Of a DNA stretch of 64,000 nt, positions 33,519 through 52,133 are shown piece by piece (the stretch's first letter is position 1; every line of letters begins with the position of its first letter). Source of the DNA: Octopus sinensis (lineage: Eukaryota). The DNA lies in assembly GCF_006345805.1 (NCBI RefSeq), contig NC_043012.1:35836001-35900000 (forward strand). Reading direction: 5' to 3'. Both the position numbers and the translations under genes were made by a program. The notes beneath the pieces were generated by a model that made no database searches, was not told the origin of the DNA, and saw nothing but the letters and a program-made list of their open reading frames with translations.

Positions 33519-33522
<4 letters not shown>
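33127..33522 (-). mobile_element. Full-length family C tRNA-derived SINE (probably CORE/OR-type)
   Basis: Reverse complement of the 57287-57698 family; bipartite with an internal (TA)/(TG) run. Confidence 0.85.
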
Positions 33523-33559
<37 letters not shown>

Positions 33560-33654
33560 AATATATATATTGCAATTTTTTGTTTTGCATATTTTTGTTG
33601 TATGGCAAATTTTCCTACAGCAAAAATGTTTACAACCCTCCATAAAGTAAGACT

Positions 33655-33884
33655 GTACGAGCATATAGTGTAATGGTTAAAAGCGCAAGATTGCTAGTTC
33701 AATTCCAAGCAGTGCCTTGACTAAATAATAATAATAATAATTACATCAGCAAAAAAATACCGTAGGAATGAGAAACCAGGGCACCTGATGAAGGCTGGAG
33801 GGTATATCAGCCAAAACATTGTGGTAGCAACAAACAAGATGAGGACACATATCCGTCAAATGTAAATAAAGTAAATAAAGTAAG
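33655..33884 (+). mobile_element. tRNA-headed SINE carrying a decayed minimal hammerhead-like motif
   Basis: A-box TAGTGTAATGG (33666), B-box AGTTCAATTCC (33696), CAC-CTGATGA-A-GGCTG..CAGCC-AAA-ACAT-T-GTG (33782-33823), tandem tail tgtaaataaagtaaataaagta. Confidence 0.6.
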
Positions 33885-34391
33885 AGCGCTGTATTAAAGG
33901 AGGTGAAAGCGTGATAGAGGGGCTGGCCATGGATCCAATTGGACCTGGCGGGGTAGTCGGGGGGGGGGGCTACATAACAACATTAACGATAAAGAGGATC
34001 AAAGTGAACAACAAAAAAAATTGTAGAAATTATGCAAAAAATAAATAATAAGCAGCAATAACAACAGGGAATCAATAAAAGATTCTTGTGGGTCTTTGAC
34101 TGACTTGAAACAACAGCAAAATCTCCCTCAAAGCAGACTCTTGCCATTTTGAAAAAAAAACAATATCACAGGGGATTCTGAAGTTTGGGAGGGACGAAAT
34201 ATATAATAATTAAATGATCAAAGCCTCCTCTTTCAGGACTGACCTGGGGTTAAACAACAACAGCAGCTATAATAATTAGAAGAAGTGAATAATATAAAAC
34301 AAGTCATTAAAGAAAAACACATGACCAAAAAAAAAAACAAATCTGATTGGCTTTTCTTGAAAATAGCAACGAATTCTTGGCAGCTTATTTA

Positions 34392-34430
<39 letters not shown>

Positions 34431-34704
34431 GTTATTCTTGTGTGAAATAAATGAGTCAGAGGTGCCTTAGGGTCTGTCCCCAACTGAAATAATACAATTG
34501 TTTTAATTAGCTTGTATTCCATGTTGATTCGTTAAATGTTGGGCATCATCGTTGTTATATCATCATCTCTGTGGAAAGTTGTAATTAGCGGAGAAAATGG
34601 AGTTTGAGGTCGTCACTGGGAATTACTTATTTGAGGATTTCACGGCAAACTTTATGAAGAAACAAACCGTTTCTGCAGAGCTGCAACTTGTAATTTGCAT
34701 ATTA

Positions 34705-34884
34705 TGAACATCATCATCATCATCATCATCATCATGGTCGTCATCATAATTGTCATCATTATCATTATTATTATTACTATTATTGCAAAATGAAAGAAAT
34801 TAATATTATTAATTTATTATAGTTATGATTGAAATTATAATTATTATTACTATCATTATTGATATTCATTATTATCATTACTTC

Positions 34885-34952
<68 letters not shown>

Positions 34953-34976
34953 TTATTATTGTTGTTATTATTATTA

Positions 34977-35026
<50 letters not shown>

Positions 35027-35030
35027 GATA
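34705..35030. repeat. (ATC)n/(ATT)n array
   Basis: Direct inspection. Confidence 0.95.
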
Positions 35031-35132
35031 TTGTTACAAATATTTCTATCTAAACGAAATAAGAAATTACTTTTATGCATAATAGAAAATATTTATTATT
35101 CACATACAAACAGATGCATATATATGTATATG

Positions 35133-35164
<32 letters not shown>

Positions 35165-36339
35165 CAAACATGTATATATATACACACACATGTATATATA
35201 TATGTATATTATATATGTATGTATATATATATATATATTATATATATATATATAATAATATATATATTATATATATATATACATATATATGCATATATAT
35301 ATATATATTCACATACAAATATATATAAATAGATTAATTTATTATTAGTTGATTATATTCATAAGTTTTGAAAGAAAAATAATTAAAATTTCATTAAATA
35401 TAATGAAGAAAATTAAATGTTAGTTTTTCAATAAAATACTTTGAACAGCATTAGTCATTATTTATTTTCTAAATTATATTTATTATGTTTATATTTATGA
35501 TTCCCTATGCACACAAATATAAATGCATACATACTTGTGTGTGTGTGGTTAGAATGTAGCATGGGAAAGTGAATGTTTAATGATGATGTTGGAATAAATG
35601 ACTATGTATGTATATATATATATTGTATATATACATGTATGTTATGTGTGTATGTGTGTACACAAACACATGCATATACACATACCTATATAAATATGTG
35701 TGTCAGTGTATATGTGTGTGTGTGTGTGTACACACAAGCACACATGCTTATACATATGATATATATTATATTTTGTTTTGGTCAAGTCCTGCTACTCTGA
35801 GTTTCCCCTGTAGGTGCACAGGATCCTCAGTCAAGTTATGACAGTCATATCTTGCCCAAAGTAAAACATCAATAATCTTTACCATGGTATTGAGTACTGG
35901 TTTTTTCTGATAGTTAACACCAAATAGCTACATTATAAATGTATATAGATCATCGTCATCATCATCATCATCATCATTTAATGTCTGCTCTCCATGCTGG
36001 CATGGATTGGACAGGTTGACATGGAGCTGGCTAGTAGGGGTCAGCTGTCCAGATTCAAACTGTCTGTTGTGGCATGGTTTCTATGGCTGGATGCCCTTCC
36101 TAATGCCAACCACTTAGCAGGATTGCATTTTACATGCTACCAGCATGGGCATGTTCATGCAGCACCAGCACAGTGGAGGCGCAGTGGTTAGGGGCAGCAG
36201 ACTCATGGTCAGAGGATCATGGTTTTGATTCCCAGACCGGGTGTTGTGTTTGTTTATTGAGCGAAAACACCTAAAGCCCATTTTATGTGGCACTGACACC
36301 TGTAAAAGACATGCCTGAATGTGTGGAAAACAGCGATTT

Positions 36340-36540
36340 TACTTTGCACATCTTCTAAAGTGCAGCAAATTGCCACATCTCCCTGTTCCTTGTCATTTCC
36401 TCAGTGAGGCCCAGCATCCGGAGATCATTTCTCACCACATCTTCCTGGGTCTACACCTTCCCTGCATAATTAGAGCTTGCCACTTCTTTATGTAGCTGTC
36501 CTCATCCATATGCATCATATGACCAAACCAGTGCAGTCTT
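36340..36540 (-). mobile_element. Decayed RTE LINE ORF C-terminal fragment
   Basis: Minus strand gives RLHWFGHMMHMDEDSYIKKWQALIMQGR..RPRKMW, resembling the RTE RLRWFGH...GRPRKTW motif. Confidence 0.6.
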
Positions 36541-37334
36541 CTGTGTGTGTGTGTGTGTAATACGCACATATATATATATACATATAGTTTGATAGATAGA
36601 TAGATAGATAGTTAGATAGGTAGGTAGGTAGGTAGGTAGGTAGGTAGGTTGGCAGACAGACAGATAGATGTACACACAATGTGTGTGTCTTTTCATTTTG
36701 AATATAAAACACAGTAACATTTAGATATTGTCATTAGAGGCAAAAAATGAAAATTGTTTTAACAAAGTATTTTGAATTAATTATATCTACACTTGAAATT
36801 TTTTGAAAAAATGTGCATTAGCAAACTACACAGCATTTCAACTCAGTGTTTGTTCCATTAAATTGTGATTCTACTTGTTAGAGATCAACTTGAAAGTGCA
36901 GAATTTAATAAGGTTTTAATGAAACCACCATTCAAGTGTGGTCGATGCCAGTACTGCTTGACTGGCCCTTGTGGCAGTGGCATGTAAAAAGCACCCACTA
37001 CACTCTTGGAGTGGTTGGTGTTAGGAAGGGCATCCAGCTGTAGAAATTTTGCCAGATCATATTGGAGCCTGGTGCAGCCTTCTGGCTTGCCAGCCCTCAG
37101 TCAAACCATCCAGCTCATGCCATCATTGAAAGCAGACATTAAACGACAATAATGATGATGAGAGGATCAATTAGAAAGAGTTCAATTGTGGATTAATTAG
37201 ATAGTGGTTCATCTCGATAGAGGATTAAGTCTATTAATGCATTTTAAACTTCTTTTATGTAATAACTATTGCTGCCCTTTTTTTGCTTCTGCTAACATTT
37301 TGTGGTTAACCCCTTCACTGTGATTCAATAGAGT

Positions 37335-37660
37335 GAAGGACTGAGGCTTAGTGGTTAAGGTATTCAGCTCACGGTCATGTGATCCTGAGTTCAATTCCTG
37401 GCAGTATGTTGTGGCCTTGAGCAAGGCTCTGTATTTCACATTGCTCCAGTCCACTCAGCTGGCAAAAATGAGTTGTACCTGTAATTCAAAGGGGCCAGCC
37501 TTGCCCCATTCTGTGTCACAGTGAACCTCCCTGAGAGCTACATTAAGGGTACACATGTGTCTGTGGAGTGCTCAGCCACTTGCACGCTGGTTTCATGAAC
37601 AGATTGTTCCATTGACCAGATTAGCTGGAACTCCTGTCGTCATAAGTGATGACGGTCCAG
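37335..37660 (+). mobile_element. Family B tRNA-derived SINE, long copy
   Basis: gaggcttagtggttaagg...gagttcaattcc...cttgagcaag...gtccactcagctggcaaaaatgagt. Confidence 0.8.
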
Positions 37661-38023
37661 TGTTTTTTCTTTTATGATTCAACAAATACACCAGAAAAGA
37701 TTGTTGTCCACTAGTTTGTCACTGCTTGTACATCATAAGTCCTTTCATCAGTACAATATGGATGCTGGGTGATCTTTGCACACAGGCTAAAAATTGAAGT
37801 TATTTTTGAAAATTTGGACAATCCCTCCCACACACACACACCCTCTACTCTCTTTGTCCCCCTCAAATTCATATACCTTAGAACTCTCTCCCATCTCGAT
37901 GTTTTCCTCCTTCTTATGACCTAAACTCTTTTAAACTGAAGTAAATTTTTTCCTTTCATCTTGATTTGTACCTCTTTATAGTCCTTTACACTAAATGGCT
38001 TCTCACTTTTTTTTGGACTTTCT

Positions 38024-38067
<44 letters not shown>

Positions 38068-38117
38068 TCGTCCAAGCCAAAGGTGGTAGTATTCTCTTTG
38101 AAAAGCATTGAGATAAG

Positions 38118-38415
38118 GGCTCAACTAGAGATCAGATCAACTAGATTTAGATTCATTTAATCAGTAATTGAACTCACTAGATTGTGATTCAACTAAGTGG
38201 TGGATCAACTGGATTATGGTTTAGTTATGTATGGGATCAACTATGTGTGGTTCAACTAGATAGTGTATTGACTAGCTAGTAGATTGTGATTCAGCAAGGT
38301 AGTGGATTAACTTAGTGTGGTTCACTTTGGTAGCTGATTAATTAGGCAAGTGAATCGACTTGGCTATTGTTCATCTAAATATTGGATCAGCTGTGTAGTT
38401 AATGTATCAGCTAGG
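38118..38415. repeat. Degenerate minisatellite with a (G/T)ATCAACTAG-like core
   Basis: Recurrent tcaacta/tcaactg motifs at irregular ~12-20 bp spacing. Confidence 0.55.
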
Positions 38416-38479
38416 GCATGGATTGGTGTTCTGCCATGCTGGGGCACTGCTATTAGTGTGATTTCTAGTTTATTTCAAA

Positions 38480-39560
38480 CTTATGACCCTCTTCCCAGAT
38501 TTGGTTTTGTTAATAATTTTGGCAGAGCTCTTTCTATTTGCCATGATATGGGTTCATCTGGTGTCTCAATTAAAAATTTATCTAAATGTTTTTTGAGCAC
38601 ATCCATGTCTACCTCCTGTTTTGACAAGGTATTGAAAAGCTGTGGGTTCTTGGACCCTAAGCTGTTACAGTATTGACTTGTTACTTCAGCTAGAGAGGCT
38701 GGGATCTTTGGTACTCTGCACTGATGTTGAAACTGAAAGTTGTTATAGCTTTCAATCCCCAAATTAGCTGCTAGATCCTTCAGGTGTGGCTGTGTGGTAA
38801 GAAGTTTGTTGCACAACCACATGGTTCCGGGTTCAGTCCCACTGCATGGCACTTTGGGCAAGTGTCTTTTACTACTTCTTCGGGTTGACCAAAGCCTTGT
38901 GAGTGGATTTGGTAGACAGAAACTGAAAGAAGCCCATTGTTCATATATATATATATATGGGGTGGGTGGGTGGGTCTGTGTTTGTCCCCCACTACTGCTT
39001 GACAATTGGTGGTTGTGTGTCTTTTGTCCCTCTAACTCAGCAGTTTGGCAAAAGCGACTGATAAAATAAGCACTAGGCTCGATTTATTTGGCAATAACTC
39101 TTCAAGGCTGTGCCCCAGCATGGCCACAGTCTAATGACTGAAACAAAAGATAAAAGATATATATATATATAAATATCACTGCATATCTTTTGTATCTTCT
39201 CTCTCTGGGGAAGAGAGTCTGAATTCTTTTAACCTTCAACACTCGCTCATCTATTGCACAAATGCAATTGCTTTACTTTGGGTTGCCTCAAGTTTTGCTG
39301 TCAGTTTAACACTTGGTGGGGACCATAATAGGGACCAGTAATACAGATCATTGGAAATGAATGTTCTCATTCGGGCCAACATAGTTTTCACTTTCCTGGT
39401 TGTGAATGATCTCAGAATATCCAACCAGCCAGTTCTTTGCACAGTGTTACCATCAAAATAATATGCATATGGAATGATGCATCATTACTCATGTGGATTC
39501 TCAGGTCATAGCCCTACTGTGAATCTAGGATTACAATACCAGCTGCTCTTGCATATTCTT
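38480..39560 (-). mobile_element. CR1/L2-type LINE 3' portion interrupted by a family C SINE (38781-39165)
   Basis: Minus strand: DLRIHMSNDASFHMHI, GWLDILRSFTTRKVKTML...YWSLLWSPPSVKLTAKLEATQ, ERRYKRYAVIFI | SINE | NLGIESY...CRVPKIP...YCNSLGSKNPQLFNTL...LDKFLIETPDEP. Confidence 0.8.
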
Positions 39561-39722
39561 ACTGCATTCATTTATGAACTGGTTGCAGGACCCTTCAACA
39601 TTTTCAGCACTGAACTGCTTATGGTCTTCTTCAGGTCTTTCTGAAGATTTCTCTTATCCTCAGCCTGTGATTCCCTTCTGTCATCAGCATTGCTGGTGAA
39701 AATGGCTGATTATATTATAAGA

Positions 39723-40121
39723 CTAGCAGTATCGCCCGGCGTTGCTCGGGTTTGTAAGGGAAATAACTATATAAGCATTTTTAGAGATGTAAAGTATAAA
39801 AGCCATCTCAATATGGCTAACCACAAAGGTGGGGGTGTTACTGTAGCTTTTTACGTTCTGAGATTTAATAATAAATTTTTAGAGAGTTACTTCCTTATAT
39901 ATGCCAAAAATGCATTAAAAATGGGAAAAATTGATGGTAAATTATTTTTAAAATTGTAGACTCATCGTAGACGCGCGCTAATACCCAGAAGGGCTCGATA
40001 TGAATCACGACTATAAGATACCCGGTTTTGGTTAAGCTGCACCGCAAAATGTGGGAGTAGTTAGGAATCTAAATCGTAGGAGACAGACAGCACACAACCT
40101 CTCTTTTATATATAAAGAAGA
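39723..40121 (-). mobile_element. Complete non-autonomous Helitron (399 bp)
   Basis: Minus strand: A|TC at the 5' end (40121), subterminal hairpin CCCGAGC-AAC-GCCGGG, 8 nt, then CTAG|T at the 3' end (39723); inserted at an A-T dinucleotide without TSD. Confidence 0.85.
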
Positions 40122-40362
40122 TATGGAAAGCAGGTACACGGTTAAAATCCAAGCTGTGTCCTCTTGAGGAACATTTGCTTATTCCAGTATTCCAGATACA
40201 TTTTGTGTAAGTTATATATAAGAGTTAAAAAATACTGGAAAATATTTTCTGTAGAGTAAGAATATCAAAACATGATATTGAGAAAATTTTGGTATTATTT
40301 ATTCATCATTCAATGGTAAATAAATAATACCAAGAAATTTCTCAATCTCCTGTTTCAGCATA

Positions 40363-40403
<41 letters not shown>

Positions 40404-40492
40404 CAACAATTGAGGGTAAAATTAATTAATTAATCAATTTCACCAGTATTCAGTATGCAAAGGGACCATTTAAGGCGAATTCAAATTATTAC

Positions 40493-40567
40493 ATTATATA
40501 AAAGGGCTTAGTAAAATAAATTACTTTGCCGCAAAGTAATTTATTTTACTAAGCCCTTTTATATAAT
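40493..40567. repeat. Perfect inverted repeat: 37-bp arms, 1-nt spacer
   Basis: ATTATATAAAAGGGCTTAGTAAAATAAATTACTTTGC-C-GCAAAGTAATTTATTTTACTAAGCCCTTTTATATAAT; zero mismatches. Confidence 0.97.
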
Positions 40568-40569
40568 AT

Positions 40570-40604
<35 letters not shown>

Positions 40605-40780
40605 GGGAAGAGTTTACGAAAAAAAAAAGATGAAGACAGGTGGTGTACAAAACAAACAGATGTATTAGTATAATGCTCAGGAATAGAAAAAGTCTTTTAC
40701 GTTTCGAGCCTACGCTCTTCTACAGAAAGGGACACAGAAAAAACATGGTGAGAAAAAAATGTGTGTAGTGGCTAACGATA
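40605..40780 (-). mobile_element. Penelope-like element terminal (pLTR-like) fragment
   Basis: Contains the acgtttcg...ctcttc signature typical of PLE termini; bounded by (AT)n. Family assignment from recall. Confidence 0.55.
40694..40729 (-). ncRNA. Minimal type I hammerhead-ribozyme-like motif (PLE type)
   Basis: Minus strand CUUU-CUGUAGA-A-GAGC(GUAG)GCUC-GAA-ACGU-A-AAAG: stem I CUUU/AAAG, stem II GAGC/GCUC, palindromic stem III ACGU, GUA cleavage triplet; core has U in place of A6. Confidence 0.55.
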
Positions 40781-42034
40781 TATATACATATATATATGTG
40801 TGTATGTAAGTACATATATATTTTATATAGCTTCATTGGACTTACCTATTGAGTGAAGTATTGTGTAATTGTATATCTCAAATAATTCTGTATATTCCCT
40901 ATCATTTGATGTGGTTAGCCAGATTTGGATTGTATCAGAGTGCTAATAAGGTACCTGCCCAGATTCCAAATTCCTATTTATATTCCTATATATATATATA
41001 TATGTGTGTGTATATGTATATATGTATATATGTATATATACATATATACATATATATATACATGTATATATGTATATATGTATATATACATTTATACATG
41101 CATATATATATATGTATATATGTATATATGCTGATGTGGCCATGTCATAAGAAGTTTGCTTTCCAACCACATGGTTTCATGTTCAATCTCAGTGTGTGGT
41201 GCCATGGGCAGGTGTCTCCTGATGGAGTCCTTAGATGATTGGATTTGGTAGATAGAAACTGAAAGAAGCCCATCATATGTGTGTGTGTTACTGTCCCCGT
41301 GCTATGACATCGCATGATAGTTGTGTCACCATCACTCAAGTGGTTTCCATCATTTCCAGTCTTTTGTGAGAAGATGTTTCTCCAAGGAGAAAATATTTCC
41401 TTACTTGGAAACAGGTGAGGGTCAGTTACAGGGAGAGCATTCCGTTTCAATGAATTCTATCTGACCCATGCAAGCATGGAAAAGTTGATGTTAAAATGAT
41501 GATGATGATGATGATGATGATGATATATATATGTACATATTATTGAGAGGTTGAACCAATTTCATGTCATATATTACACACAGTCTACAGTTATAATGTA
41601 CACACACACACACACACACACACGCAAACAAACAAGCATACACACACATAAATGTATATACATGTACACACATACATATAGTTATATGTCTTTTTAGCTA
41701 ATTTTCTCTGGATTTAGCATTTTAGGGCCCTGGGTTGGGATCGTAGACCTTTTTTTTTTTTTTGAAGCAAAGTTTTACAGCCAGAGGCTGCTCCTAATTC
41801 TAACCATTTTAGTAATCCCTTACAGCACCTATGGAGAGCTGGAAAAAGATGAGAGAACAATTCAGCTTCTCCATCTACACAAACTTTTGCTGTCATCTGA
41901 AGAACGAGAACAAGAGAAAAGGAATAAAGATCTTTGGAATAAAGAAATTTCATCTTCCCAAAAACTATGTTACTCTGCCTCCTCTGTTGTGTACTTTCTT
42001 TTCTTGCTCCTGTTCACATTTGAGTGTCAACATT

Positions 42035-42088
<54 letters not shown>

Positions 42089-42141
42089 GTATGTATATTT
42101 ATATATGTGTGTGTTTGTGCATGTATATAGGTGCATATATA

Positions 42142-42180
<39 letters not shown>

Positions 42181-42705
42181 GCACACACACTCACACACAT
42201 ATATGTATATGTGTATATGTATATATATGTGAGTGCGTGTGTGTATACATATATATATTTATGCATATAGATATATATAAATACAAATCAAATATGTATA
42301 TGTGTGTATGCATATATATATATATATATAGATATATATATATATATATAATATATATATGTATATATATGTATGTATACACACACACACACATATATAT
42401 ATACATACACACACATATTCACATACCCATTCATATACATACACACATACATACATTTGTGTGTGTGTGTGTGTATCCTTATCCATGGACATAACTAAAA
42501 TACAGACGACTACAAATACAGGCATTAAACATCTCCAGCCATGAAATCATTAACCATTCTCATTAGTAGACCTTCAATCATAAACCTTAAATATTACAAA
42601 AAAAAAACCAACAAAAAAAACAACAAAATATAACCCGTAAAATTCCAGTACATTCCGGGTGCATCAACAGTTCGACCTCATTCCAAGTTATAAATATATT
42701 TGCAG

Positions 42706-42873
42706 CTCCAGGAATGGGTTTGCCACTTGTGTCGGAAGCGGAGAGTTTTGGTACTTAGCACCGGTCTTTGGTATCATGGGAGGCACCGCAACCCAGATTC
42801 TATAATCCTGCAGGTGATTGAATCCCAATGTCTGCTAGAGAAATCCTCACAAATAACCCAACAGATTCCATCC
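42706..42873 (+). CDS. Internal coding exon of a RIM/Piccolo/Fife/rabphilin-type Rab-effector protein (C-terminal half of FYVE-like zinc finger)
   Basis: Acceptor ttgcag (42705) or ctccag (42711), both phase 0; donor TCC|gtaagt at 42874. Open frame (LQ)EWVCHLCRKRRVLVLSTGLWYHGRHRNPDSIILQVIESQCLLEKSSQITQQIPS. The W-x-C-x2-C-R-K...G-x-W-[FY] pattern matches RIM (WVCNLCRKQQEILTKSGAWF). Exact orthologue not determined. Confidence 0.8.
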
Positions 42874-42929
42874 GTAAGTGAAAGGACAATTTATCAATTA
42901 GAACAAGCAACAAGTTTGCACAGTCTGCT

Positions 42930-42967
<38 letters not shown>

Positions 42968-43939
42968 TATCTGCTTGCATCTCCCTCTCTTTCTCTTATT
43001 TCTCTTTACCTTTGTCAGTGTTAAATATGTTTTGCATGCTTCCCATTCTCTCTCTCTCTCTCTCACTCAGTCTATCTATCTGCCTTTCTCTCTGTCTATG
43101 GATAGATAGATAGGAAGATAGAAAGATAGATTTGTCTGTCTGTCTTTATGACTGTCTGTCTGTTTGTCACTTCCTCTTGCTCTTTTATATTTGATACTTT
43201 TTTTTATTTTATTTTTACAATCTTTTTCAGTCTTATATTCTCTCTCTATCTCCTTCTCTACCTCTTCTTCCCCCTGGCAAGCCCCTCCTTCTCTGTCTGT
43301 CTCTCTGTCTCTCTCTCTATTCCTCTCTCTTACCTCTCTGTTGATAATCTCCCTCCCTCTTCCCCTCTTTGCTTTCTTCTCCATTTCTGTTTCCTCTCTG
43401 TTCTTTCCACTATATCCCTCTCTCTGTCTCTCTCTTTCTCTCTCCCCCTCTCTGTATATTCATATATACACGCATATATATGTACACACTCTCTCACACA
43501 TCCACAGACATCTCTTCGTCCCCCCCTCTCACAGTCTCTGTCTGTTTCTCAACCTCTCTTTCTTTGCCTCACTCTCTCCCTTCCTCCCTCCCACTATCTC
43601 TCACTCTCACTCTCACTCTCACTCTGTCTCATCTTCTATCTCTCTCTCTCTCTCAGTGAACACCCGCCCCCTACTCTAAAATGTGCATGTTTCATGATTC
43701 TTCACCAATAAACGCCATTGGTTATCTTATCTGATTGATCCCAATATATATATTTGATGACCGCTTCCGCAACATTACCAAACAAACCTCTCCTCTCCCC
43801 CATGCACACATGCACATAAATATCAATAAATGTACATACATTCACACACACACACATGTATGTGTATGTATGTGTGAATGTATGTATGCATACATGTGTG
43901 TATATGTGTGTGTATGTGTGTGTATATATATATATATGC

Positions 43940-43972
<33 letters not shown>

Positions 43973-46900
43973 TACTCATACATATATATATGTATATATG
44001 TATGTATTTATGTATGTATGTATGTAAATATATATATGCATGTATGTATGTATGTATATACATGCATACGCATATATCTAGCCGGTGCTATACAGACACT
44101 CAGTAGACCTCTTCCGATCACAAAGTTAGAATTCCTTAATAGAGATACTAATAATTAATAAAATTGTTAATGAGATAGATCACCTCCTTGCTCCCCACAG
44201 TTCTGAAACATATTTGCCTTAGTTCAAAATTCCACCGAGAACTCTCCCTTCCTCTGTGACTTACATGTATCAGTAACGACAAGATCTGACCCCCAATTTA
44301 GCACTTATGGAAAAGGTTGGGGTTAAGTAAACTAAGTCTATGGCCAATAGGGACCAAGTTGTGCTGTAGCCATTGTCCAACTCCCATCTACATTTCTGAA
44401 ATGGTTTTACTGCTAGAAAGAGTGAAATAGCCAGAGATTTTTGGCTCGTGTTCCTTGTATATCTGATTTCCACTTTGATTGGTCCGTTTCTGAAGACACT
44501 TGAAGAATAGACTTATTCTGAAAGAGAGTTTAGGGAAATAGAAATACCAAAGGTGCTATTACTAATCATAATTCAAATATTTTGCATTATTGCATAACTA
44601 TACCAGATAATATATACATATATATACGTAATTATATATATATATATATATTATATATATATACATATATTTTCAAAATGTGACAAGTGACCACACCCCT
44701 GACACACAGATGAATGATGGGTAAAAACGAAGATTGGTAAGTAAGGGTTACCCAAAAGATGCTGCTCTTAAAAATACTTCATAACAGAAAATAATTTCAT
44801 TATTTCAGCCAAACCAAAACTGTTCAATGACTCAAACCGGTTTTTTATCGAGCATTTGTCTTCTATTTTTTGTCGGCTTTTTCTTCTTCTTTTTCTTCTC
44901 TGTTTTAATTATATTTTTATTGTTTTTCAAGTATTTTCTTTGCTTGCATAAACCTAAGAAAGAAGAAGACATATTGATTTTCTTATATATCTTTGAAATA
45001 TACCAAACTCTCTGCTAATGGCACTGTAGTGGTGGTGGTGGTGGTGGTGGTGGTGGTGGTGGTGGTGGTGATGGTGTTGGTGGCGGCGGTAGTGGCGGCA
45101 GTTGTGGTGGCAGTAGGTGTCACTGGGGTCAGACTTGAGGTAGGACTGCTGGATATGTCAGACTCCAGGTCAGTATTAGAAGGGGTTTGGGTAACCCTGT
45201 GTGAGAGGGGTTGTATTTGTGGATGTATGTATGTGTGGTTGTGGACCAGTGATGTGTATGTGTATGTGAGTGTGTGTGTGTCAACAGTGGTCTGTGTGTG
45301 TATTGTGTATGTGTGTGTATTGTGTATGTGTGTGTTTATAGTGGTGTATATGCATATGTGTGTGTGTGAGTGTATATTATTGTGATGTTCTACAGTATAT
45401 ATGTGTAATGATGTAAGTTTGTATTGTGTATGTGTGTATGTGTAGTGACATGGATGTATTCATTTTTGTAGTTGATCTTGTTCAGCTCCAAGTTGACTCT
45501 GATCCAACAGAATATGACCTTAGGCATTCCAGCCATGGCCACTTCATCTATTTTTTCAGGAACTCTGTACTTGAGACTACATTCTCTAATGTGTCTCTTC
45601 TTTTGTTAGAAAAGTAGAGTGCGATTAGAAGGAGCAGTTGGAAGACCATGTAAAAGCTTGTTGGTGTCCATGGTGTTTGGGGCGGTGGTGATAGTTGCTG
45701 TCGCTTGTTGTTTAGCCCCAGGTCAACTGTAATTCAACTGACCTATAATCATGTCTCTTTTGTGTTTTTAAGACTATATTTTCGAATAAGTCCTTCAGTT
45801 GAGAAAATATTAGCTGCTATCTCTAGCAAGCTCATTGACTGCATAGAGGCTCCTTTAATAGAGTCTGCAGCAATGCTATGAGATATGTATGTAGGGATGT
45901 ATTGTAATGTGTGTGTGTCTAGTGTGTGTGTCTGGTGTGTGTATGTGTGTGTGTGTGTGTAGTGATGCCATGTGTGTGGGGTGTGCTTGTGTATAGTGAG
46001 CTGTGTATGTCTGTGTATGTAGGTATTCAGTCATTAACAAAGCAATTAATCAACCTAATTATTTATTTATTTCTCACCATTAGTCTGTGTTCACTTCCGA
46101 TCAATTCTCCAATCCATCACATCAGCCTCTGCTCTGTATTGAACCCTAAAACATTATCTTCACTGACTGAGAAGTAGTACAGTGAGATGTTATTATTCAT
46201 TCTTTTGTTATCCACGTCAATCATCCGGTAAAACTTTATTCAGCAATCACCACTCATTAAACTTCTACACTCTCTACTTCATCTGTCAATTCTACTTTAA
46301 TCTGTAATCCATTACTTTTAAATCTACCAAGTCACTGATTGATTGAAAGAGAGAGAGAGGGAGAGAGAGATAAATAGGAAGAGAGAAAGGGAGAGAATGT
46401 GAGAGAGGAGGGTGAGGGAGTGAGTGACAAGACTTTTGTGTATAATTTGACTGAGGGTTGAACCCTGGTCCCTGCTCCTAGAGATTTCAGCCTAAGTGTA
46501 AGTATGTTTCATGATGGAAGACACTGTATGTGGTTATCTTACCTGTACTAGAAATAGCACCTAAATTGCATTCTATGGTGTTAAATAAATAAAAACATGG
46601 AAGAGCATATTGTATTATACAGCCCTTGATACAATGTCTTAATTAAAAAAAAAAACAGGAGAGTCACATCTGGAACACCTTTGATGATGATTATGCTGGA
46701 TCAGGACTGATCTGATGGCAACAATATATGTTACATAATTTATTGGCCAATACAAAGGACATGAAATTCATTCGATTTATTTGTTAGAATGTAATTAGAA
46801 TGTCACAGGAAAATCTCACAAGATAGATTCTTGAAGCTGAGACAACCAGCAGGACATCTGAAGAGAGTTCCAGAAGGAGACAGTTGGATGATATCCACAG

Positions 46901-48382
46901 TCTCATTTGGTCATGCTTGGGAATTCAACTGGAAAGTGTAACTGGTTGCTTCTGAGAGGGCCCTACAGAGGAGGTGCCTGAGGGCTCTGACCCCTATGAT
47001 CCTCTCAGGAATAGTGGGTGGAAAAAATAGCTAGATGGAACTGGATTTGATCTCAGCATTGTTAGCATGAAACTATTTACCAATTTCCTCACAGTTGATC
47101 ACATCACCCTGTAGTTCTACTGTCTGTGAAATGGTAAATGCTGAGTAGCACAACCAGTCATTGAACAATGACAGGAATATCATAAGAGGGACCTATCTCT
47201 AATATCAGTTCACAGCATCTGCTTTTCCAGTATCTGTTCCTGAGGAGGAGATAACCACTCTGAAATGCATGTATCCAACAGCCTGGTTAGGGAATGCTGT
47301 AAACTGACTTGGTGTATCTACACCTATTTGTCTGCAACAAGAAGTTTTCTCCAAGACTAAAAACTGTCAGTGGCTTTCTTATGGATTCAAATATACCCCA
47401 AACATATTCGAACTGACAAGTATAAAGTATGTCTAAGGGGTTGATGGTAAAAGCAAGGAGCACTGAATAAATAAAACCTGTAGAGACCTGCAAGAAATAT
47501 GGTGAGCATGATCTGTTGGACGGGTCAAACTAACTTCTCTAAAGAGCAAAACCCTTAAGACATGAGAAAATAGTTGTGGTATTAAAGGAATCAGGTGAAG
47601 TATGAAGTATTTGTGATGCCAATGTGAGACAGGGAACGAGGCAGATCTGTTATGGTGGGAGAGAAAGGAGGCAAGTATGATCTTATGTCCACAGGAAAGA
47701 CAACTGTGTTGGTATTGGATATATCAGGAGAATGGATGGTAAATGTTAGGGAACTCTGTAGAGGAGGAAGATCACTAGAGTAGCTAGAGCGGGGTGAAGG
47801 GGGCAGTCCCCCTTGCGTGACACTTTTATGGGGGTAGCACCACTTTTGGCTCTGCTATATGCAATATGTATTTTAATTAGGGGCTCGGGGGAAGCAGACT
47901 GAAGGGCCACTCTGAGTGGCACACACTCTTGTCACACTAGTGAGAAAGATATGATGAGGTAAGATCTTAGGTTATTAATCCTCACAAAAGAAATAATAAA
48001 AGATTGATATATATGAAGAGATATAATATACAGTATAACTATGCTACCTGACTGATACCAGCGAAGAAATGGGTTGTTTGTTATCTATTTTGATGATTAC
48101 GATGATGTTGATGATGATGATGATGATGACATGATCTGCGTATGTTTAATTGTTTTACACACTGCACTGGCTCTACAGCTGTATCTGTGTGTAAAGGCAG
48201 ATGAATGTGAATAAAGCTGTTTTTGGCAATTCTAAAAACATGTTTTCTATAATCACATAGTGTGTCACAAGTGATCTAGTTGTACTAAATGTTGTCTAAT
48301 AATATTTTCTGGATGCTGTATGGGTACATAAGATTTTCATTATATATCTGTGTGTGTGTGTGTGTGTGGTTGTGTGTGTGTG

Positions 48383-48425
<43 letters not shown>

Positions 48426-49188
48426 TTATATACTATTATTTTATTTTACATACAGCTTGCATTGTAGGATGACTCCTTCATCAGCTGTCATCTGGAGATC
48501 ACAATGGTTTTGCCATCTTCAGATGCAGCATCTCTCCCTTTAGTAGCCCCAAGCAGTATTGATGCTACTATGTCTGGTTTATTTTGGTCCAAACTGCAAC
48601 ACAAATTTTTCTTTCTGTTTTATATATGTGTATACACACACACACACACACACACACATGACTCTATGGTGCTTAAGAAGTCCACATCACATCCACATGG
48701 GCTCAGACTCAGCCACACTTGCATGGCACTTCAGGCATATCTCTACTTGAAAAACAGGTCAGGTTTAGCAACAGGAAGAGCATCCGACTGACAAACAGTA
48801 ATCTGTGCTAGCATTGAAAACAGACATAAAATGTATGTATTATGTATCTCTGTATCTATGGATGTATGTGAGGAAGTAAGAGAGAGTTAGAGAGTATATC
48901 ATAATGTCTGTATGTGTGTATGTGTGTGTGTGTGTGTGTGTGCTTATGCCAAAACCATTTTCATATCAAAAAATGTGCTTACAATATCACAGGAGACATT
49001 ATTGCCATGTAACAGCATCCATCGATCTTTCAGTCTATCACCACCTTGACCACTATGAAGAAACAGTGAGGAGGAGGAGTGACACTGCACTATTCCCTTG
49101 GAATCAACCACTTCCACAGACTTTATCAACAACACCTTCATACCTGTTTATCAATATCAATTTGGCTTCTTTTTGTTTTCTGTTTCAG

Positions 49189-49236
49189 AGTCCCCCCAAA
49201 CAAGGGGAAACCGAAGAGAAATCAACTCCAAAACCT
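49189..49236 (+). CDS. 48-nt phase 0-0 exon (SPPKQGETEEKSTPKP), probably the same gene as 42706-42873
   Basis: Strong acceptor tggcttctttttgttttctgtttcag; donor CCT|gtaagt; 16 codons with no stop; same strand and phase as the upstream exon; no assembly gap between them. Confidence 0.65.
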
Positions 49237-49995
49237 GTAAGTAAATTCTTCTCATTATCTTCATTCTTTTATTCTTTTATTTATTTAGCATTTTTAAAAT
49301 TTTGTTTTATGTATTGTCTCTCATGATTTTGTTTGTTTTGTTGATTTTTTGTTTTGCAGTGATCTAGATTAAATCTTCCCTCAAAATTTCATGCTAGTTT
49401 CTGTCCCAAACACCAGAGTAATTAATGACAAACCTATTTTACTAAATTCTTCATTATTTACAAAATTAATTGAAACAAAAGCAGGGAATTTCAACAGAAA
49501 TATGGTTAACGAAAAGATTAAATCATTATGGACCCTAGTAGCAGTGTCACAAAAAATATGCCCCCCACCCACCCAGTCCACCGTCTGTAAAGCTGTTGGT
49601 GTTAGGAAGGGCATCATCCATTCAGCCATAGGAACCATACCAGAAGAGGCATTGGAACACGATGCAGTTCTTGGGGTCATTGGATCCGGTCAAACTGTCC
49701 AACTCATGACAGCATGGAACATGATGTTGATGATGGTTTTAGAGGATGGCAGGGTGGGGGAGCAGAAGCTATGACCGATTTGCAGTGTCTCTAAAAGTGG
49801 TGGAAGGAAAGGAGAGGAAGGTGTTACTTTGAAACCAGGGACTGGGTCTGAATGTTCGCAATAGTGGACACTGCCAAATGTAGTCACAGGTTAGGTGGTG
49901 GTGTTAAACTGGACAATGGATGAAGTCTGCCTCTTCTCACCATGAACAATCCTTGTGGTGAGTTTCCATAAACATCCTATCTATGAAATTTCACT

Positions 49996-50095
49996 NNNNN
50001 NNNNNNNNNNNNNNNNNNNNNNNNNNNNNNNNNNNNNNNNNNNNNNNNNNNNNNNNNNNNNNNNNNNNNNNNNNNNNNNNNNNNNNNNNNNNNNN
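49996..50095. other. Assembly gap (100 N)
   Basis: Run of exactly 100 n, a typical placeholder of unknown size. Confidence 0.99.
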
Positions 50096-50518
50096 TGTAT
50101 ATATGTATATATATAGATATATGTATGTATGTATGTATATATGCAGACAGATATGTGTGTGTGTATATGCATATGTGTGTATATGCATGTGTGTGTGTGT
50201 GTGTGAACTTACATAAATACAGTGCACATGTTATGCATGTTATTGCTGTGACCAGTTGTACATGTCTGTCTCATATCCATTATAAAATTTTTTTGCTAAT
50301 AATACCCTCATCACCACCACCGCCACCACCACCGCCACCATCACTCTCATCAACATTGTCATTGTTGTTGTCACTTCCACTATCACCACACACGTACACA
50401 CACACACACATGCACAGACACAAGTATGTATATATATGTGTGTGTGCGCGTTGTGTGTGTGTGTGTATGTATATGTGTGCTATGCATGGATATATATATA
50501 TACACATATAAATATATT

Positions 50519-50564
<46 letters not shown>

Positions 50565-50660
50565 CATATATATATTTATATATACATACATATATATATG
50601 TATATATATGTATATATATATAAATACATATATATATGTATGTGATGTTATGTATGTATG

Positions 50661-50727
<67 letters not shown>

Positions 50728-51185
50728 CACATATATATACATACAATATATATTTATAGTGAGATAAATAGATAGATAGATAGTTAGATAGGTAGATAGG
50801 ACAGGATAGATCTGTACATGTATGTATGGGTATTTGTGTGTCTATCTTCCTTTGATGTATTTTGGCAAAGGATGAACACATTAGTGAGAAAGCCAATAAG
50901 CCAGTCCTGTTTGACAAAAGTACTATGCAATATTTGTTCTGCACCAAGTAGCAGACACGCCTTTGTCAGTGTCACTGCAAGAAACACATTAAATCAATGA
51001 TTGATCTGTTGTAAACCTGTAACCAGCAATACAACTGTGATCTAAAGTAAAATAAAATAAAGCTGGCCGTGTTGTTTCAGGTCTCTGTTCATTCACTGAT
51101 GTCGTTTTTGTTCTCTTAAACACATTGGATGGAAATTGGAACACTTCAGGCTTGTCCATGTTCCAACACCCAACATTAATTAAAA

Positions 51186-51399
51186 CCCATTAGTGCCCAT
51201 AGTCCATTCTTTAGGACCAAAAGGATAATCCATCATATTTCTGTAACACCTGTATTTTCCTGAGATACCTTTAGTTAGTCTTCAAGACTGGGGTGCCTTT
51301 CACATATTGTAATAAAACTTTCTTTTTTATATTTAGTATCAGATAAAAAAACAGATTTTTCGTAATAAATTAAATAAAAAACGTTTGGGCCCTAATGGG
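51186..51399. mobile_element. piggyBac-type MITE (second family)
   Basis: Left ttaaaa|cccattagtgccca, right tgggccctaatggg|ttaa: 14-bp TIR with one mismatch; TTAA at the right end, TTAAAA at the left. Confidence 0.75.
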
Positions 51400-51469
51400 T
51401 TAACAGCAGCAAACCTTGCTTTCAACACTCAGGATTATTTCATGCTCAGAATTGTCAAAGTAAGGGATA

Positions 51470-51690
51470 AACTATGTGCCCCTGGACGAAATGCTTTGCG
51501 GTGTTTCGTCTGCTGCTGTGTTCTGAGTTCAAATTCCGCCGAGGTCGACTTTGCCTTTCATCCTTTCGGGGTCGATAAATTAAGTACCAGTTACGCACTG
51601 GGGTCGAATGTAATTGACTTAATCCCTTTGTCTGTCTTGTTTGTCCCCTCTGTGTTTAGCCCCTTGTGGGTAGTAAAGAAATATATGTAC
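51470..51690 (+). mobile_element. Family D SINE, near-consensus CpG-rich copy
   Basis: gttctgagttcaaattccgccgaggtcgactttgcctttcatcctttcggggtcgataaattaagtaccagttacgcactgggg. Confidence 0.85.
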
Positions 51691-51969
51691 CCCTGAAGTT
51701 AACTGTCACGACAGTGCCTCCTTCAAAAATGCTTCCTGCAATTTCCCAACCCTATTCCTGGTCTGCCAGTCTACCATTTCCTCTCTATGATCCTTTCATT
51801 GTTCCCTTTTCTATCTTTTTGTAGTTTTCTCCTGTCCAAGTTCTATGCAAGGATTTTAGGATTTTTTTTTTTTTTTTTTTTTTTTCTTTATTTGAATTAG
51901 GTTTGCTTTTTTGGCCCTCTTTTAACCTTTTCTCACAAGTTGTAGTGCATCTGAACGTTGTCGACGATA

Positions 51970-52133
51970 TGTTAGTCATCATCATCGTCACCACCACTAC
52001 AGCCATGACCACTACCAACATCATCATCATCATTGCCATCACCACTACCACCACCATCATCATCATCATTGCCATCACCACCACCACCATCACCACCACT
52101 AACACCACCACCATCATCACTACTACAACCATT

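What the first reader, a model, noticed from the sequence alone, without database searches (positions are those of the whole stretch)
42706..42873. Hidden exon of a RIM/Piccolo/Fife-like active-zone protein
Seen: a phase 0-0 exon with a gtaagt donor encoding EWVCHLCRKRRVLVLSTGLWYHG. Known: RIM, rabphilin and Slp Rab-binding domains end with W-x-C-x2-C...(S/T)G-x-W-(F/Y). Inferred: this divergent version (TGLWYH rather than SGAWF) may be a mollusc RIM paralogue or Fife/Piccolo-like gene. The ORF track buries it inside a (CT)n-extended ORF. I found no convincing upstream zinc-finger exon in the preceding 42 kb, implying a very long intron or a missed exon. Two in-frame acceptors 6 nt apart allow +/- LQ isoforms.
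Basis: partly seen in the sequence, partly recalled or inferred. Interest (0 to 1): 0.7.

Follow-up and report, generated by a model that had tools for sequence, protein, structure and literature searches.

The report
Octopus Piccolo-like zinc-finger exon, already annotated
The stretch is a real, conserved coding exon that completes the N-terminal zinc finger of the octopus counterpart of the synaptic scaffold protein Piccolo. It is already in the public Octopus sinensis annotation under a misleading name, so it is ordinary, not new.

Summary
Window 42706-42873 (+) is a 168-nt phase 0-0 exon with an AG acceptor and a gtaagt donor, encoding LQEWVCHLCRKRRVLVLSTGLWYHG...QQIPS.

The window is 100% identical to Octopus sinensis chromosome CM016874.1. 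The exon equals residues 46-101 of RefSeq XP_029646265.2, named 'formin-like protein 18 isoform X1' (250 aa), so it is annotated, not hidden.

The 'missing' zinc-finger exon (six of the eight Cys) lies 50.7 kb upstream, 8 kb outside the window. A 48-nt exon follows at 49189-49236.

The spliced product passes the Pfam cut-offs for zf-piccolo and FYVE_2. The exon alone does not.

The closest full-length relatives are Lingula, oyster and mussel 'piccolo-like' proteins of 2,244-2,346 aa, built as zinc finger, PDZ and C2. Their zinc-finger core is 55-59% identical to the octopus one, against 31-32% for RIM. Their PDZ and C2A domains are closer to vertebrate Piccolo than to RIM.

Direct comparison with Fife/RIM-II was not possible.

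The RefSeq model looks cut short at both ends. The ±LQ isoforms and A-to-I recoding remain untested.

Novelty: already known. Interest is low.

The parts
1..42705 (+). 3' 42.7 kb of a 50,704-bp phase-0 intron that splits the zinc finger between Cys6 and Cys7. It contains only repeats and transposon relics.
   Evidence: The upstream exon ends at L001 10135 (AAG|gtgagt) and this exon starts at L001 60840, which is window 42706. No '+'-strand reading-frame segment holds two CxxC pairs. RVT_1 and mariner fragments were found.
42686..42705 (+). Acceptor region ...ataaatatatttgcag; the AG at 42704-42705 is the one used by the RefSeq model.
   Evidence: Sequence. P0001 reads ...STK|LQEW across the junction.
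42706..42873 (+). Coding exon, 168 nt, phase 0-0, 56 aa, equal to residues 46-101 of XP_029646265.2.
   Evidence: Cross-phylum tblastn hits fall only here.
42710..42711 (+). Second in-frame AG (end of the Gln codon CAG). A possible alternative acceptor that would remove LQ; no evidence that it is used.
   Evidence: Sequence. LQ, LK or VQ is retained in oyster, mussel, Tegillarca, Lingula and Elysia proteins.
42721..42732 (+). C-H-L-C: the fourth CxxC pair (Cys7/Cys8) of the eight-Cys finger.
   Evidence: These columns are invariant in alignment A1 (C51, C54 of P0001). They align to the last CxxC of rabphilin-3A (1ZBD) and the RIM2 zinc finger (2A20).
42733..42744 (+). Basic R-K-R-R run directly after the finger. 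The last two Arg are invariant in the clade; RIM has K-Q-Q-E here.
   Evidence: R57, R58 invariant.
42757..42780 (+). S-T-G-L-W-Y-H-G, the clade's version of the SGAWF(F/Y) motif of rabphilin and RIM.
   Evidence: Aligned with SGAWFF of rabphilin and SGEWF/TGKWI of RIM. G65, W67 and G70 are invariant in A1.
42793..42858 (+). Predicted helix DSIILQVIESQCLLEKSSQITQ, corresponding to (V/I)PL(E/A)RE(I/V)xxxLxxxK in bivalves.
   Evidence: AF2 model helix 75-96, block pLDDT 69-77. tblastn alignments extend through it for Mercenaria, Mytilus, Crassostrea and Tegillarca.
42874..42879 (+). Donor gtaagt.
   Evidence: The junction IPS|SPPK is present in P0001.
42874..49188 (+). Intron of 6,315 bp, phase 0.
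49189..49236 (+). Next coding exon of the same gene, 48 nt, phase 0-0, SPPKQGETEEKSTPKP (P0001 residues 102-117). It has acceptor ...tttctgtttcag and donor gtaagt.
49237..64000 (+). First 14.8 kb of a 15,388-bp intron, including a 100-N assembly gap at 49996-50095. The next exon starts 625 bp past the window end.

Best explanation
Window 42706-42873 is a genuine internal coding exon of an Octopus sinensis gene that is most likely the octopus orthologue of invertebrate Piccolo. Piccolo is a large presynaptic active-zone scaffold built as N-terminal helix, zinc finger, long disordered linker, PDZ and C2. The exon is spliced to an upstream exon 50.7 kb away that carries Cys1-Cys6 (CPIC...CKDC...CDDC). 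The exon itself supplies Cys7/Cys8 (CHLC), which by analogy with rabphilin-3A and the RIM zinc finger complete the second zinc site of a cross-braced two-zinc finger. It then supplies a basic RKRR run, an STGLWYHG motif standing in for the SGAWF(F/Y) Rab-contact motif of rabphilin and RIM, and a short conserved helix. Shown here: the exon boundaries, its use in an annotated model, its cross-phylum conservation, the Pfam domain membership of the spliced product, and the clade placement of its closest relatives. Inferred: that the octopus gene continues to PDZ and C2 exons beyond the DNA available here. Also inferred: that the module binds zinc and a Rab-GTP and/or Munc13-type partner, so as to tether vesicles at release sites. 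The RefSeq model, named 'formin-like protein 18' (250 aa), appears to be a fragment. The reading frame stays open and homologous upstream of its start Met. Its stop also lies in a CAG repeat, after which another frame stays open.
For: The window is 100% identical to O. sinensis CM016874.1. The exon is 100% identical to P0001 residues 46-101, which is XP_029646265.2. All four junctions have canonical AG/GT and phase 0. Pfam on P0001 gives zf-piccolo 35.8 bits (cut-off 30) and FYVE_2 35.3 bits (cut-off 27.2). In PDB, rabphilin-3A 1ZBD scores E=3.3e-4 with all Cys pairs and SGAWF aligned, and the RIM2 zinc finger 2A20 scores E=0.0095. Searching with the best full-length relative (Lingula P0010) returns oyster 'protein piccolo-like', mussel, hemichordate and starfish proteins, all with FYVE_2 (zf-piccolo too except the oyster), PDZ and C2. 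After them come Bufo Piccolo (261 bits) and then RIM1/2 (217 bits or less). The octopus zinc-finger core is 55-59% identical to Lingula and bivalves, against 31-32% to RIM-I. The Lingula PDZ is 55% identical to Piccolo against 36-42% to RIM, and its C2A is 54% against 43-48%. The PDZ ligand-site motif is AKIY/AAIY, like Piccolo's AKIL, and unlike RIM-I TKVK or RIM-II TWIV. Deuterostome members carry a C2B 43-51% identical to Piccolo C2B, against 28-31% for RIM. Published work reports that molluscs have a Piccolo besides RIM and Fife (PMC9282427). L001 9917-10000, upstream of the annotated Met, reads EIEEDYTSYAADIVRKSSWSELENEGKT and aligns with Lingula and bivalve sequence.
Against: No PDZ or C2 exon of the octopus gene could be inspected, because only 93 kb of the chromosome was retrievable. 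The link to a full Piccolo-like architecture therefore rests on orthology of the zinc finger alone. No Fife/RIM-II sequence was available for direct comparison. The AF2 model of the finger was of only moderate confidence (block pLDDT 65-85; shallow 8-row alignment, no zinc), and Foldseek found no significant PDB match, so the fold is supported by sequence only. The RefSeq model ends at an in-frame TAG, which taken at face value gives a 250-aa protein without PDZ or C2.
Confidence: 0.77

Rival explanations
1. The exon belongs to the spiralian Fife / RIM-II gene (a protein of about 1,100 aa with zinc finger, PDZ, C2A and C2B), not to Piccolo.
For: Molluscs, including Octopus bimaculoides, possess RIM-II/Fife (PMC7456537; PMC9282427). 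No Fife sequence was available here for direct comparison.
Against: In a scan of 1.84 billion representative proteins, the only full-length hit to the exon was the 2,244-aa Lingula protein. Its PDZ and C2A are Piccolo-like and its PDZ motif is AKIY, not the RIM-II consensus TWIV. Lingula also has a RIM-II, yet it was not among the hits. Orthologue lengths of 2,244-2,346 aa do not fit the RIM-II mean of 1,113 aa.
Confidence: 0.1
2. The RefSeq model is right as it stands. The gene encodes a short, stand-alone 250-aa protein made of a zinc finger and a Pro/Ser-rich tail. It would be a small soluble Rab-effector-like protein, or a short isoform detached from the PDZ-C2 scaffold.
For: XP_029646265.2 ends at an in-frame TAG in the genome. 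No PDZ or C2 exon lies within 10 kb downstream. No other gene was called in the 10 kb downstream.
Against: The annotated start Met is internal to an exon whose upstream codons are still homologous to Lingula and bivalve proteins, so the model is at least N-terminally truncated. The stop sits in a CAG repeat, and the +1 frame stays open with similar Ser-rich composition for about 50 more codons, as expected from an assembly indel. Fragmentary zinc-finger-only models also occur in Mercenaria (369 aa) and Tegillarca (205 aa), whereas oyster, mussel and Lingula models join the same finger to PDZ-C2.
Confidence: 0.1
3. The exon belongs to canonical RIM (RIM-I, UNC-10 type).
For: It shares the general W-V-C-x2-C-R-K...(S/T)G-x-W pattern. 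There is a weak RIM2a_ZnF Pfam hit (17.3 bits).
Against: RIM2a_ZnF scores below its cut-off of 27. The zinc-finger core is only 31-32% identical to four RIM-I proteins, against 55-59% to Piccolo-like proteins, and the first loop is 9-10 residues longer than in RIM. The orthologues' PDZ lacks the RIM-I TKVK motif.
Confidence: 0.02
4. It is a chance open frame or a dead pseudo-exon that merely resembles a zinc-finger end.
For: The exon alone is below the Pfam cut-off. The word-index protein search with the 56-aa peptide found nothing.
Against: The peptide is conserved from molluscs to brachiopods, hemichordates and starfish, and the similarity stops at the exon borders. Splice sites are canonical and phase-compatible with the neighbouring exons, and it is included in a RefSeq model.
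Confidence: 0.01

Closest known systems
Invertebrate Piccolo / 'protein piccolo-like' (Lingula LOC106175070 XP_013412341.1; Crassostrea virginica A0A8B8B969; Mytilus LOC134719876; Aplysia Piccolo as described in PMC9282427)
   Same: It has the same eight-Cys finger with a long first loop, the (K/R)RR run after the last CxxC, and S(T/S)G(L/M)W(Y/H) followed by a short helix. The zinc-finger core is 55-59% identical. The sequence just N-terminal of the finger is homologous too.
   Different: The octopus RefSeq model stops after 250 aa and is named 'formin-like protein 18'. PDZ and C2 exons were not seen for octopus. The octopus helix after the finger is more diverged (IILQVIESQCLLEK against VPLERELQSQLEK).
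Vertebrate Piccolo/Bassoon zinc fingers (Pfam zf-piccolo PF05715)
   Same: The spliced octopus product passes the zf-piccolo cut-off (35.8 against 30 bits). The orthologues' PDZ, C2A and, in deuterostomes, C2B are closest to vertebrate Piccolo.
   Different: The Bufo Piccolo finger ends EWLCLNCQTQRALSGQLG, without the Trp-aromatic pair. From general knowledge, vertebrate Piccolo and Bassoon have two such fingers and no RIM-like N-terminal helix, and their fingers are reported to bind PRA1 rather than Rab3.
Rabphilin-3A Rab3-binding domain (PDB 1ZBD; Pfam FYVE_2 PF02318)
   Same: It is the best PDB sequence match (E=3.3e-4). All four CxxC pairs and the SGAWF position align. FYVE_2 is passed by the spliced product.
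   Different: Overall identity is low. Rabphilin continues to two C2 domains without a PDZ. The motif is SGAWFF there and STGLWYHG here.
RIM1/2 (RIM-I) zinc finger (PDB 2A20/2CJS; Pfam RIM2a_ZnF PF22601)
   Same: It has the same module order of helix, zinc finger, PDZ and C2, and a similar WVCxxCRK start to the last knuckle.
   Different: The core is 31-32% identical. RIM2a_ZnF scores below its cut-off. RIM has a shorter first loop and KQQE instead of KRRV after the finger. The PDZ motif is TKVK in RIM against AKIY/AAIY in this clade.
Fife (Drosophila) / spiralian Fife / RIM-II
   Same: It belongs to the same superfamily and domain order, and is also present in molluscs (PMC9282427, PMC7456537).
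   Different: These proteins are about half the length (about 1,100 aa), with the PDZ motif TWIV. Their zinc fingers were not compared directly here.

Membership tests
FYVE_2 / rabphilin-type Rab-effector zinc finger (Pfam PF02318) | Profile score at or above Pfam's gathering cut-off (27.2 bits) | tested here: met
   The spliced product P0001 scores 35.3 bits, E=1.4e-8. The exon alone scores 20.4 bits, below the cut-off, matching profile positions 93-115 of 118.
FYVE_2 / rabphilin-type Rab-effector zinc finger (Pfam PF02318) | Eight Cys as four CxxC pairs with rabphilin-like spacing | tested here: met
   CPIC, CKDC and CDDC lie in the upstream exon and CHLC in this exon. They align with rabphilin 1ZBD and RIM2 2A20. 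All are invariant in alignment A1 except the second Cys of the CPIC pair, which A1 does not list.
FYVE_2 / rabphilin-type Rab-effector zinc finger (Pfam PF02318) | SGAWF(F/Y)-type motif after the last CxxC | tested here: met
   STGLWYHG is at the aligned position. Gly and Trp are invariant in the clade, and the aromatic residue after Trp is kept as Tyr or replaced by His.
FYVE_2 / rabphilin-type Rab-effector zinc finger (Pfam PF02318) | N-terminal Rab-binding helix preceding the finger | tested here: inconclusive
   Only its C-terminal end (EIEEDYTSYAADIVRK) is visible in L001 9917-9964 and is homologous to orthologues. The DLSHLTEEE part present in orthologues lies on an exon beyond the retrievable DNA.
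FYVE_2 / rabphilin-type Rab-effector zinc finger (Pfam PF02318) | Binds two zinc ions and a GTP-bound Rab | not testable with these tools
   This needs biochemistry. The AF2/Foldseek attempt gave no significant structural match.
Piccolo zinc finger (Pfam zf-piccolo PF05715) | Profile score at or above the cut-off (30 bits) | tested here: met
   P0001 scores 35.8 bits, E=1.1e-8, covering profile positions 2-60 of 60.
Piccolo-like scaffold (zinc finger ... PDZ, C2A, with or without C2B) | The zinc finger groups with those of proteins whose PDZ and C2 are Piccolo-type | tested here: met
   The core is 55-59% identical to Lingula and bivalves, against 31-32% to RIM. Those proteins' PDZ and C2A are 54-55% identical to Bufo Piccolo, against 36-48% to RIM. 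Deuterostome members have a Piccolo-type C2B.
Piccolo-like scaffold (zinc finger ... PDZ, C2A, with or without C2B) | PDZ and C2 domains encoded by the same octopus gene | not testable with these tools
   Only CM016874.1:35,817,867-35,911,026 could be fetched. No PDZ or C2 similarity lies within it.
RIM-I (RIM1/2, UNC-10) | RIM-type zinc finger (Pfam RIM2a_ZnF at or above 27 bits) and PDZ TKVK ligand-site motif | tested here: not met
   RIM2a_ZnF scores 17.3 bits. The orthologues' PDZ has AKIY/AAIY/TAIF, against TKVK for RIM-I.
RIM-II / Fife | PDZ TWIV motif and length of about 1,100 aa (Piekut et al. 2020) | tested here: not met
   The orthologues of this exon are 2,244-2,346 aa with PDZ AKIY/AAIY. 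This was tested on orthologues, not on the octopus gene itself.
RIM-II / Fife | Zinc-finger sequence groups with Fife/RIM-II fingers | not tested
   No Fife/RIM-II sequence could be obtained.

The most novel reading that the evidence does not exclude
In octopus the Piccolo-type zinc-finger module may really be produced as a short stand-alone protein (finger plus Pro/Ser-rich tail, as the 250-aa RefSeq model says). It would be uncoupled from the PDZ-C2 scaffold, as a cephalopod-specific soluble Rab-effector-like isoform or split gene. Such a protein might also be diversified by the 6-nt tandem acceptor (±LQ) or by A-to-I recoding. More modestly, the conserved STGLW(Y/H) motif and the RIM-like N-terminal helix imply that ancestral Piccolo was a Rab effector and that vertebrate Piccolo and Bassoon lost this.
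Probability: 0.1. Interest if true: 0.4.

Novelty: already known. Interest (0 to 1): 0.15.

Why it matters
It matters mainly as an annotation correction. An Octopus sinensis gene labelled 'formin-like protein 18' is really the N-terminal zinc-finger part of the Piccolo-like active-zone scaffold, and its model is probably truncated at both ends. Anyone cataloguing cephalopod synaptic proteins by name would miss it. It also shows how a zinc finger can be split by a 50-kb intron, so that a 64-kb window holds only the last Cys pair. Finally, invertebrate Piccolo-like proteins keep an SGAWF-like motif that the one vertebrate Piccolo finger examined here (Bufo) lacks. None of this changes current understanding, because molluscan Piccolo has been described (PMC9282427).

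Tried and rejected
- The word-index protein search with the 56-aa peptide found nothing. This is a sensitivity limit of the index, because the exhaustive HMMER scan then found the identical RefSeq protein.
- A search with P0001 returned only itself.
- Regex scans for paired CxxC motifs, over all six frames and then over '+'-strand segments, found no upstream finger exon. That is correct, because it lies outside the window.
- Rfam at gathering thresholds found nothing in the window.
- The AlphaFold2 model of P0001 from an 8-row alignment had mean pLDDT 57, with 59-85 per 10-residue block over residues 1-100. Foldseek against PDB gave no match better than E=0.38, so no structural confirmation was obtained.
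- RNA folding of the exon with flanks gave z=+0.72. The only nearby inverted repeats are self-complementary TA/TG microsatellites, so there is no computational hint of an editing duplex.
- Supplements of the two key papers are not held.
- No paper mentions 'formin-like protein 18' together with octopus.
- An ORF at 58868-59227 looked by eye like a GIY-YIG (Penelope-type) nuclease, but it has no Pfam hit.
- Considered and rejected: RIM-I membership, chance ORF, and bitesize/Slp-type proteins (23-24% zinc-finger identity).

Full report
**What is in the sequence**

Window 42706-42873 on the + strand reads ...ataaatatatttgcag|CTC CAG GAA TGG GTT TGC CAC TTG TGT ... CCA TCC|gtaagt. It translates without stops to LQEWVCHLCRKRRVLVLSTGLWYHGRHRNPDSIILQVIESQCLLEKSSQITQQIPS, 56 codons. 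A second AG lies 6 nt inside it, at 42710-42711. The mechanical ORF list shows the peptide inside a 137-aa ORF (42700-43113) that reads through the donor into a (CT)n tract. The window is 30-43% G+C and full of microsatellites, which is typical of a cephalopod genome.

**Where the window comes from and whether the exon is annotated**

An exhaustive HMMER scan of 1.84 billion representative proteins with the 56-aa peptide found a 100% match over all 56 residues. The match is residues 46-101 of P0001, a 250-aa protein. P0001 is RefSeq XP_029646265.2, 'formin-like protein 18 isoform X1' of Octopus sinensis.

Its encoding locus, L001, is CM016874.1:35,817,867-35,911,026 of assembly GCA_006345805.1. 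L001 contains the whole window at 100% identity. Window coordinate equals L001 coordinate minus 18,134. If the locus is in record orientation, the window is 35,836,001-35,900,000.

So the exon is not hidden from annotation. It is hidden only from a prokaryote-style ORF list, and it sits behind an uninformative product name.

**Gene structure around the exon**

The coding parts of P0001 map as follows:

| Part | L001 coordinates | Window coordinates | Content |
|---|---|---|---|
| Exon A | 10001-10135 | about 8.0 kb before position 1 | MCPIC...SLSTK, donor AAG\|gtgagt |
| Intron | 10136-60839 (50,704 bp) | up to 42705 | phase 0 |
| Exon B | 60840-61007 | 42706-42873 | the exon in question |
| Intron | 61008-67322 (6,315 bp) | 42874-49188 | phase 0 |
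| Exon C | 67323-67370 | 49189-49236 | 48 nt, SPPKQGETEEKSTPKP, flanked by ...tttctgtttcag and gtaagt |
| Intron | 67371-82758 (15,388 bp) | 49237 to past the window end | includes a 100-N gap at window 49996-50095 |
| Exon D | from 82759 | 625 bp past the window end | Ser/Pro-rich tail |

All the introns between these four exons are phase 0. My own regex scans found no '+'-strand reading-frame segment in the window with two CxxC pairs.

**Is it more than chance?**

On its own, the exon hits Pfam FYVE_2 at E=6e-4 and 20.4 bits, below the 27.2-bit cut-off, on profile positions 93-115 of 118. That would not survive correction for picking one peptide out of a 64-kb window.

The decisive evidence is conservation. 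tblastn of proteins from the following animals against the window or L001 hits this exon, and the alignments end at its borders:
- Lingula: 76% over 25 aa, E=6e-9.
- Tegillarca: 52% over 50 aa, E=2e-11.
- Elysia, Mercenaria, Crassostrea, Mytilus, the hemichordate Ptychodera and the starfish Acanthaster.

No other stretch of the window was matched significantly by any non-octopus protein. The same proteins also hit exon A.

**What the spliced product is**

P0001 passes the Pfam cut-offs for zf-piccolo (35.8 bits against 30) and FYVE_2 (35.3 against 27.2). RIM2a_ZnF stays below its cut-off (17.3 against 27).

Against PDB sequences, the octopus helix-plus-finger segment best matches the Rab3-binding domain of rabphilin-3A (1ZBD, E=3.3e-4). 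All four CxxC pairs and the SGAWF position align. The next relevant match, third on the list, is the RIM2 zinc finger (2A20/2CJS, E=0.0095).

The finger has eight Cys. CPIC, CKDC and CDDC come from exon A, and CHLC comes from this exon. By analogy with the cross-braced rabphilin-type finger (established knowledge of 1ZBD), the exon's Cys7/Cys8 would complete the second zinc site together with Cys3/Cys4. The 50.7-kb intron therefore cuts through the finger, and the exon cannot fold alone.

After the Cys pair the exon encodes three further elements:
- RKRR. The last two Arg are invariant in the clade.
- STGLWYHG, at the position of SGAWF(F/Y).
- A segment that AlphaFold2 models as a helix (P0001 residues 75-96, block pLDDT 69-77). 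It aligns with (V/I)PL(E/A)RE(I/V)xxxLxxxK of bivalves.

**Which family**

Searching with the best full-length relative, Lingula P0010 (2,244 aa; FYVE_2/zf-piccolo, PDZ and one C2), returned the following:
- Crassostrea virginica 'protein piccolo-like' (2,346 aa) and Mytilus (2,336 aa).
- Ptychodera (3,446 aa) and three starfish proteins (about 3,100 aa).
- All of these have FYVE_2 (zf-piccolo too except the oyster), PDZ and C2.
- Next came Bufo Piccolo (261 bits), and only then RIM1/2 (217 bits or less).

Identity comparisons point the same way:

| Comparison | To Piccolo-like or Piccolo | To RIM-I |
|---|---|---|
| Octopus zinc-finger core | 55-59% (Lingula, bivalves), 46% (Ptychodera), 35-36% (starfish) | 31-32% |
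| Lingula PDZ | 55% (Bufo Piccolo) | 36-42% |
| Lingula C2A | 54% (Bufo Piccolo) | 43-48% |
| Bufo Piccolo C2B against deuterostome members | 43-51% | 28-31% |

The zinc-finger core is only 23-24% identical to bitesize-like proteins.

Piekut et al. give the PDZ ligand-site consensus as TKVK for RIM-I and TWIV for RIM-II. This clade has AKIY, AAIY or TAIF, next to Piccolo's AKIL. Orvis et al. 2022 report that molluscs have RIM, Piccolo and a spiralian Fife.

The exon therefore most likely belongs to the octopus Piccolo orthologue. Fife/RIM-II is disfavoured on three grounds: orthologue length, the PDZ motif, and the absence of any RIM-II protein among the hits of the exhaustive scan while Lingula's Piccolo-like protein was present. 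I had no Fife sequence for a direct comparison, so I leave it about 10%.

**State of the RefSeq model**

The annotated start Met (L001 10001) is internal to an exon. That exon opens after an AG at L001 9914-9915. The codons upstream of the Met read (R)EIEEDYTSYAADIVRKSSWSELENEGKT and align with Lingula, bivalve and Ptychodera sequence just before the finger. In orthologues this region is preceded by the RIM-like EPDLSHLTEEE helix. No match to that helix lies in the 9.9 kb of L001 upstream, so at least one more exon lies further away.

At the other end, the model stops at a TAG inside a CAG repeat (L001 83158). The +1 frame stays open with similar Ser-rich sequence for about 50 more codons. That is what an assembly indel would produce.

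Similar zinc-finger-only fragments are annotated in Mercenaria (369 aa) and Tegillarca (205 aa). I therefore regard the 250-aa 'formin-like' protein as a fragment of a much larger gene. I could not fetch more of the chromosome to find the PDZ and C2 exons, so a genuine short product remains a rival at about 10%.

**How it probably works (inference)**

Together with exon A and the upstream helix, this exon would build the module by which RIM-superfamily scaffolds engage vesicle Rab GTPases and/or Munc13. The Cys pair would lock the second zinc site. The STGLWYHG turn would present the conserved Trp, as SGAWF does at the Rab3 interface of rabphilin. The following helix and basic run may add contacts.

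The Bufo Piccolo finger ends ...QRALSGQLG, without the Trp. The invertebrate proteins thus look more RIM- or rabphilin-like at this site. None of this was tested.

**Unsupported extras**

- The ±LQ tandem acceptor exists in the DNA. However, LQ, LK or VQ is conserved in orthologues, and the inner AG is simply the Gln codon. I found no evidence for its use.
- A-to-I recoding cannot be assessed without reads. The exon region shows no unusual RNA structure (z=+0.72).

**Verdict**

The exon is already annotated and the family is already described in molluscs. Interest is low, apart from the annotation fix.

Noticed in passing
window 49189-49236 (+): A 48-nt phase 0-0 micro-exon (SPPKQGETEEKSTPKP) of the same gene, with a cag acceptor and a gtaagt donor.
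   Followed up: yes
L001 9914-10000 (about 8.1 kb upstream of the window start): The reading frame is open and homologous to Lingula and bivalve Piccolo-like proteins upstream of the annotated start Met of XP_029646265.2. The RefSeq model is therefore N-terminally truncated, and the exon with the RIM-like 'DLSHLTEEE' helix must lie more than 9.9 kb further upstream.
   Followed up: partly
L001 83140-83330 (about 1 kb past the window end): The RefSeq stop codon TAG sits in a CAG repeat, and the +1 frame continues open with similar Ser-rich sequence for about 50 codons. This may be an assembly indel that truncates the model.
   Followed up: partly
window 29819-30148 (-) and 31173-31421 (+): Transposon relics inside the 50.7-kb intron: a reverse-transcriptase fragment (RVT_1, E=4e-5, below the cut-off) and a mariner-type transposase fragment (Transposase_1, E=1.3e-12). 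Another RVT_1 fragment lies at L001 92803-93084.
   Followed up: partly
window 3195-3374, 6038-6215, 8488-8665, 13556-13732, 18847-19023, 36984-37159: A dispersed, SINE-like repeat of about 180-260 bp is present in at least six copies of 85-92% identity, on both strands. Its six-frame translations give the recurring 'HHHHHH(R)LTSVF(R/H)ASTGWTV...LQSDLAVFLQLDALPNANHS' pseudo-peptide. A separate 440-bp inverted pair, 33127-33565 and 57245-57681, is 84% identical.
   Followed up: partly
window 49996-50095: A run of 100 N, which is an assembly gap, inside the intron downstream of the micro-exon.
   Followed up: yes
window 26496-26929, 52036-52593, 7664-8039, 32217-32553: Large microsatellite arrays: (GTG)143, (CCA)186, (CTAT)94 and (AAG)113. 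The (GTG) and (CCA) arrays lie in the 26-28 kb and 52-54 kb blocks, which show the extreme GC-skew.
   Followed up: partly
window 58868-59227 (+): An ORF containing NFTCASENLIYAITCLGCGNNYIGQTG looks by eye like a GIY-YIG (Penelope-like element) nuclease motif, but Pfam gave no hit.
   Followed up: partly
proteins P0022-P0025 (Ptychodera and starfish), not in the window: Hemichordate and starfish members of this clade are 3,100-3,450 aa and end in a C2B 43-51% identical to vertebrate Piccolo C2B. PMC9282427 states that echinoderms lack Piccolo and have a 'small' relative called Chalumeau. The relation between these proteins and Chalumeau may deserve a second look.
   Followed up: no
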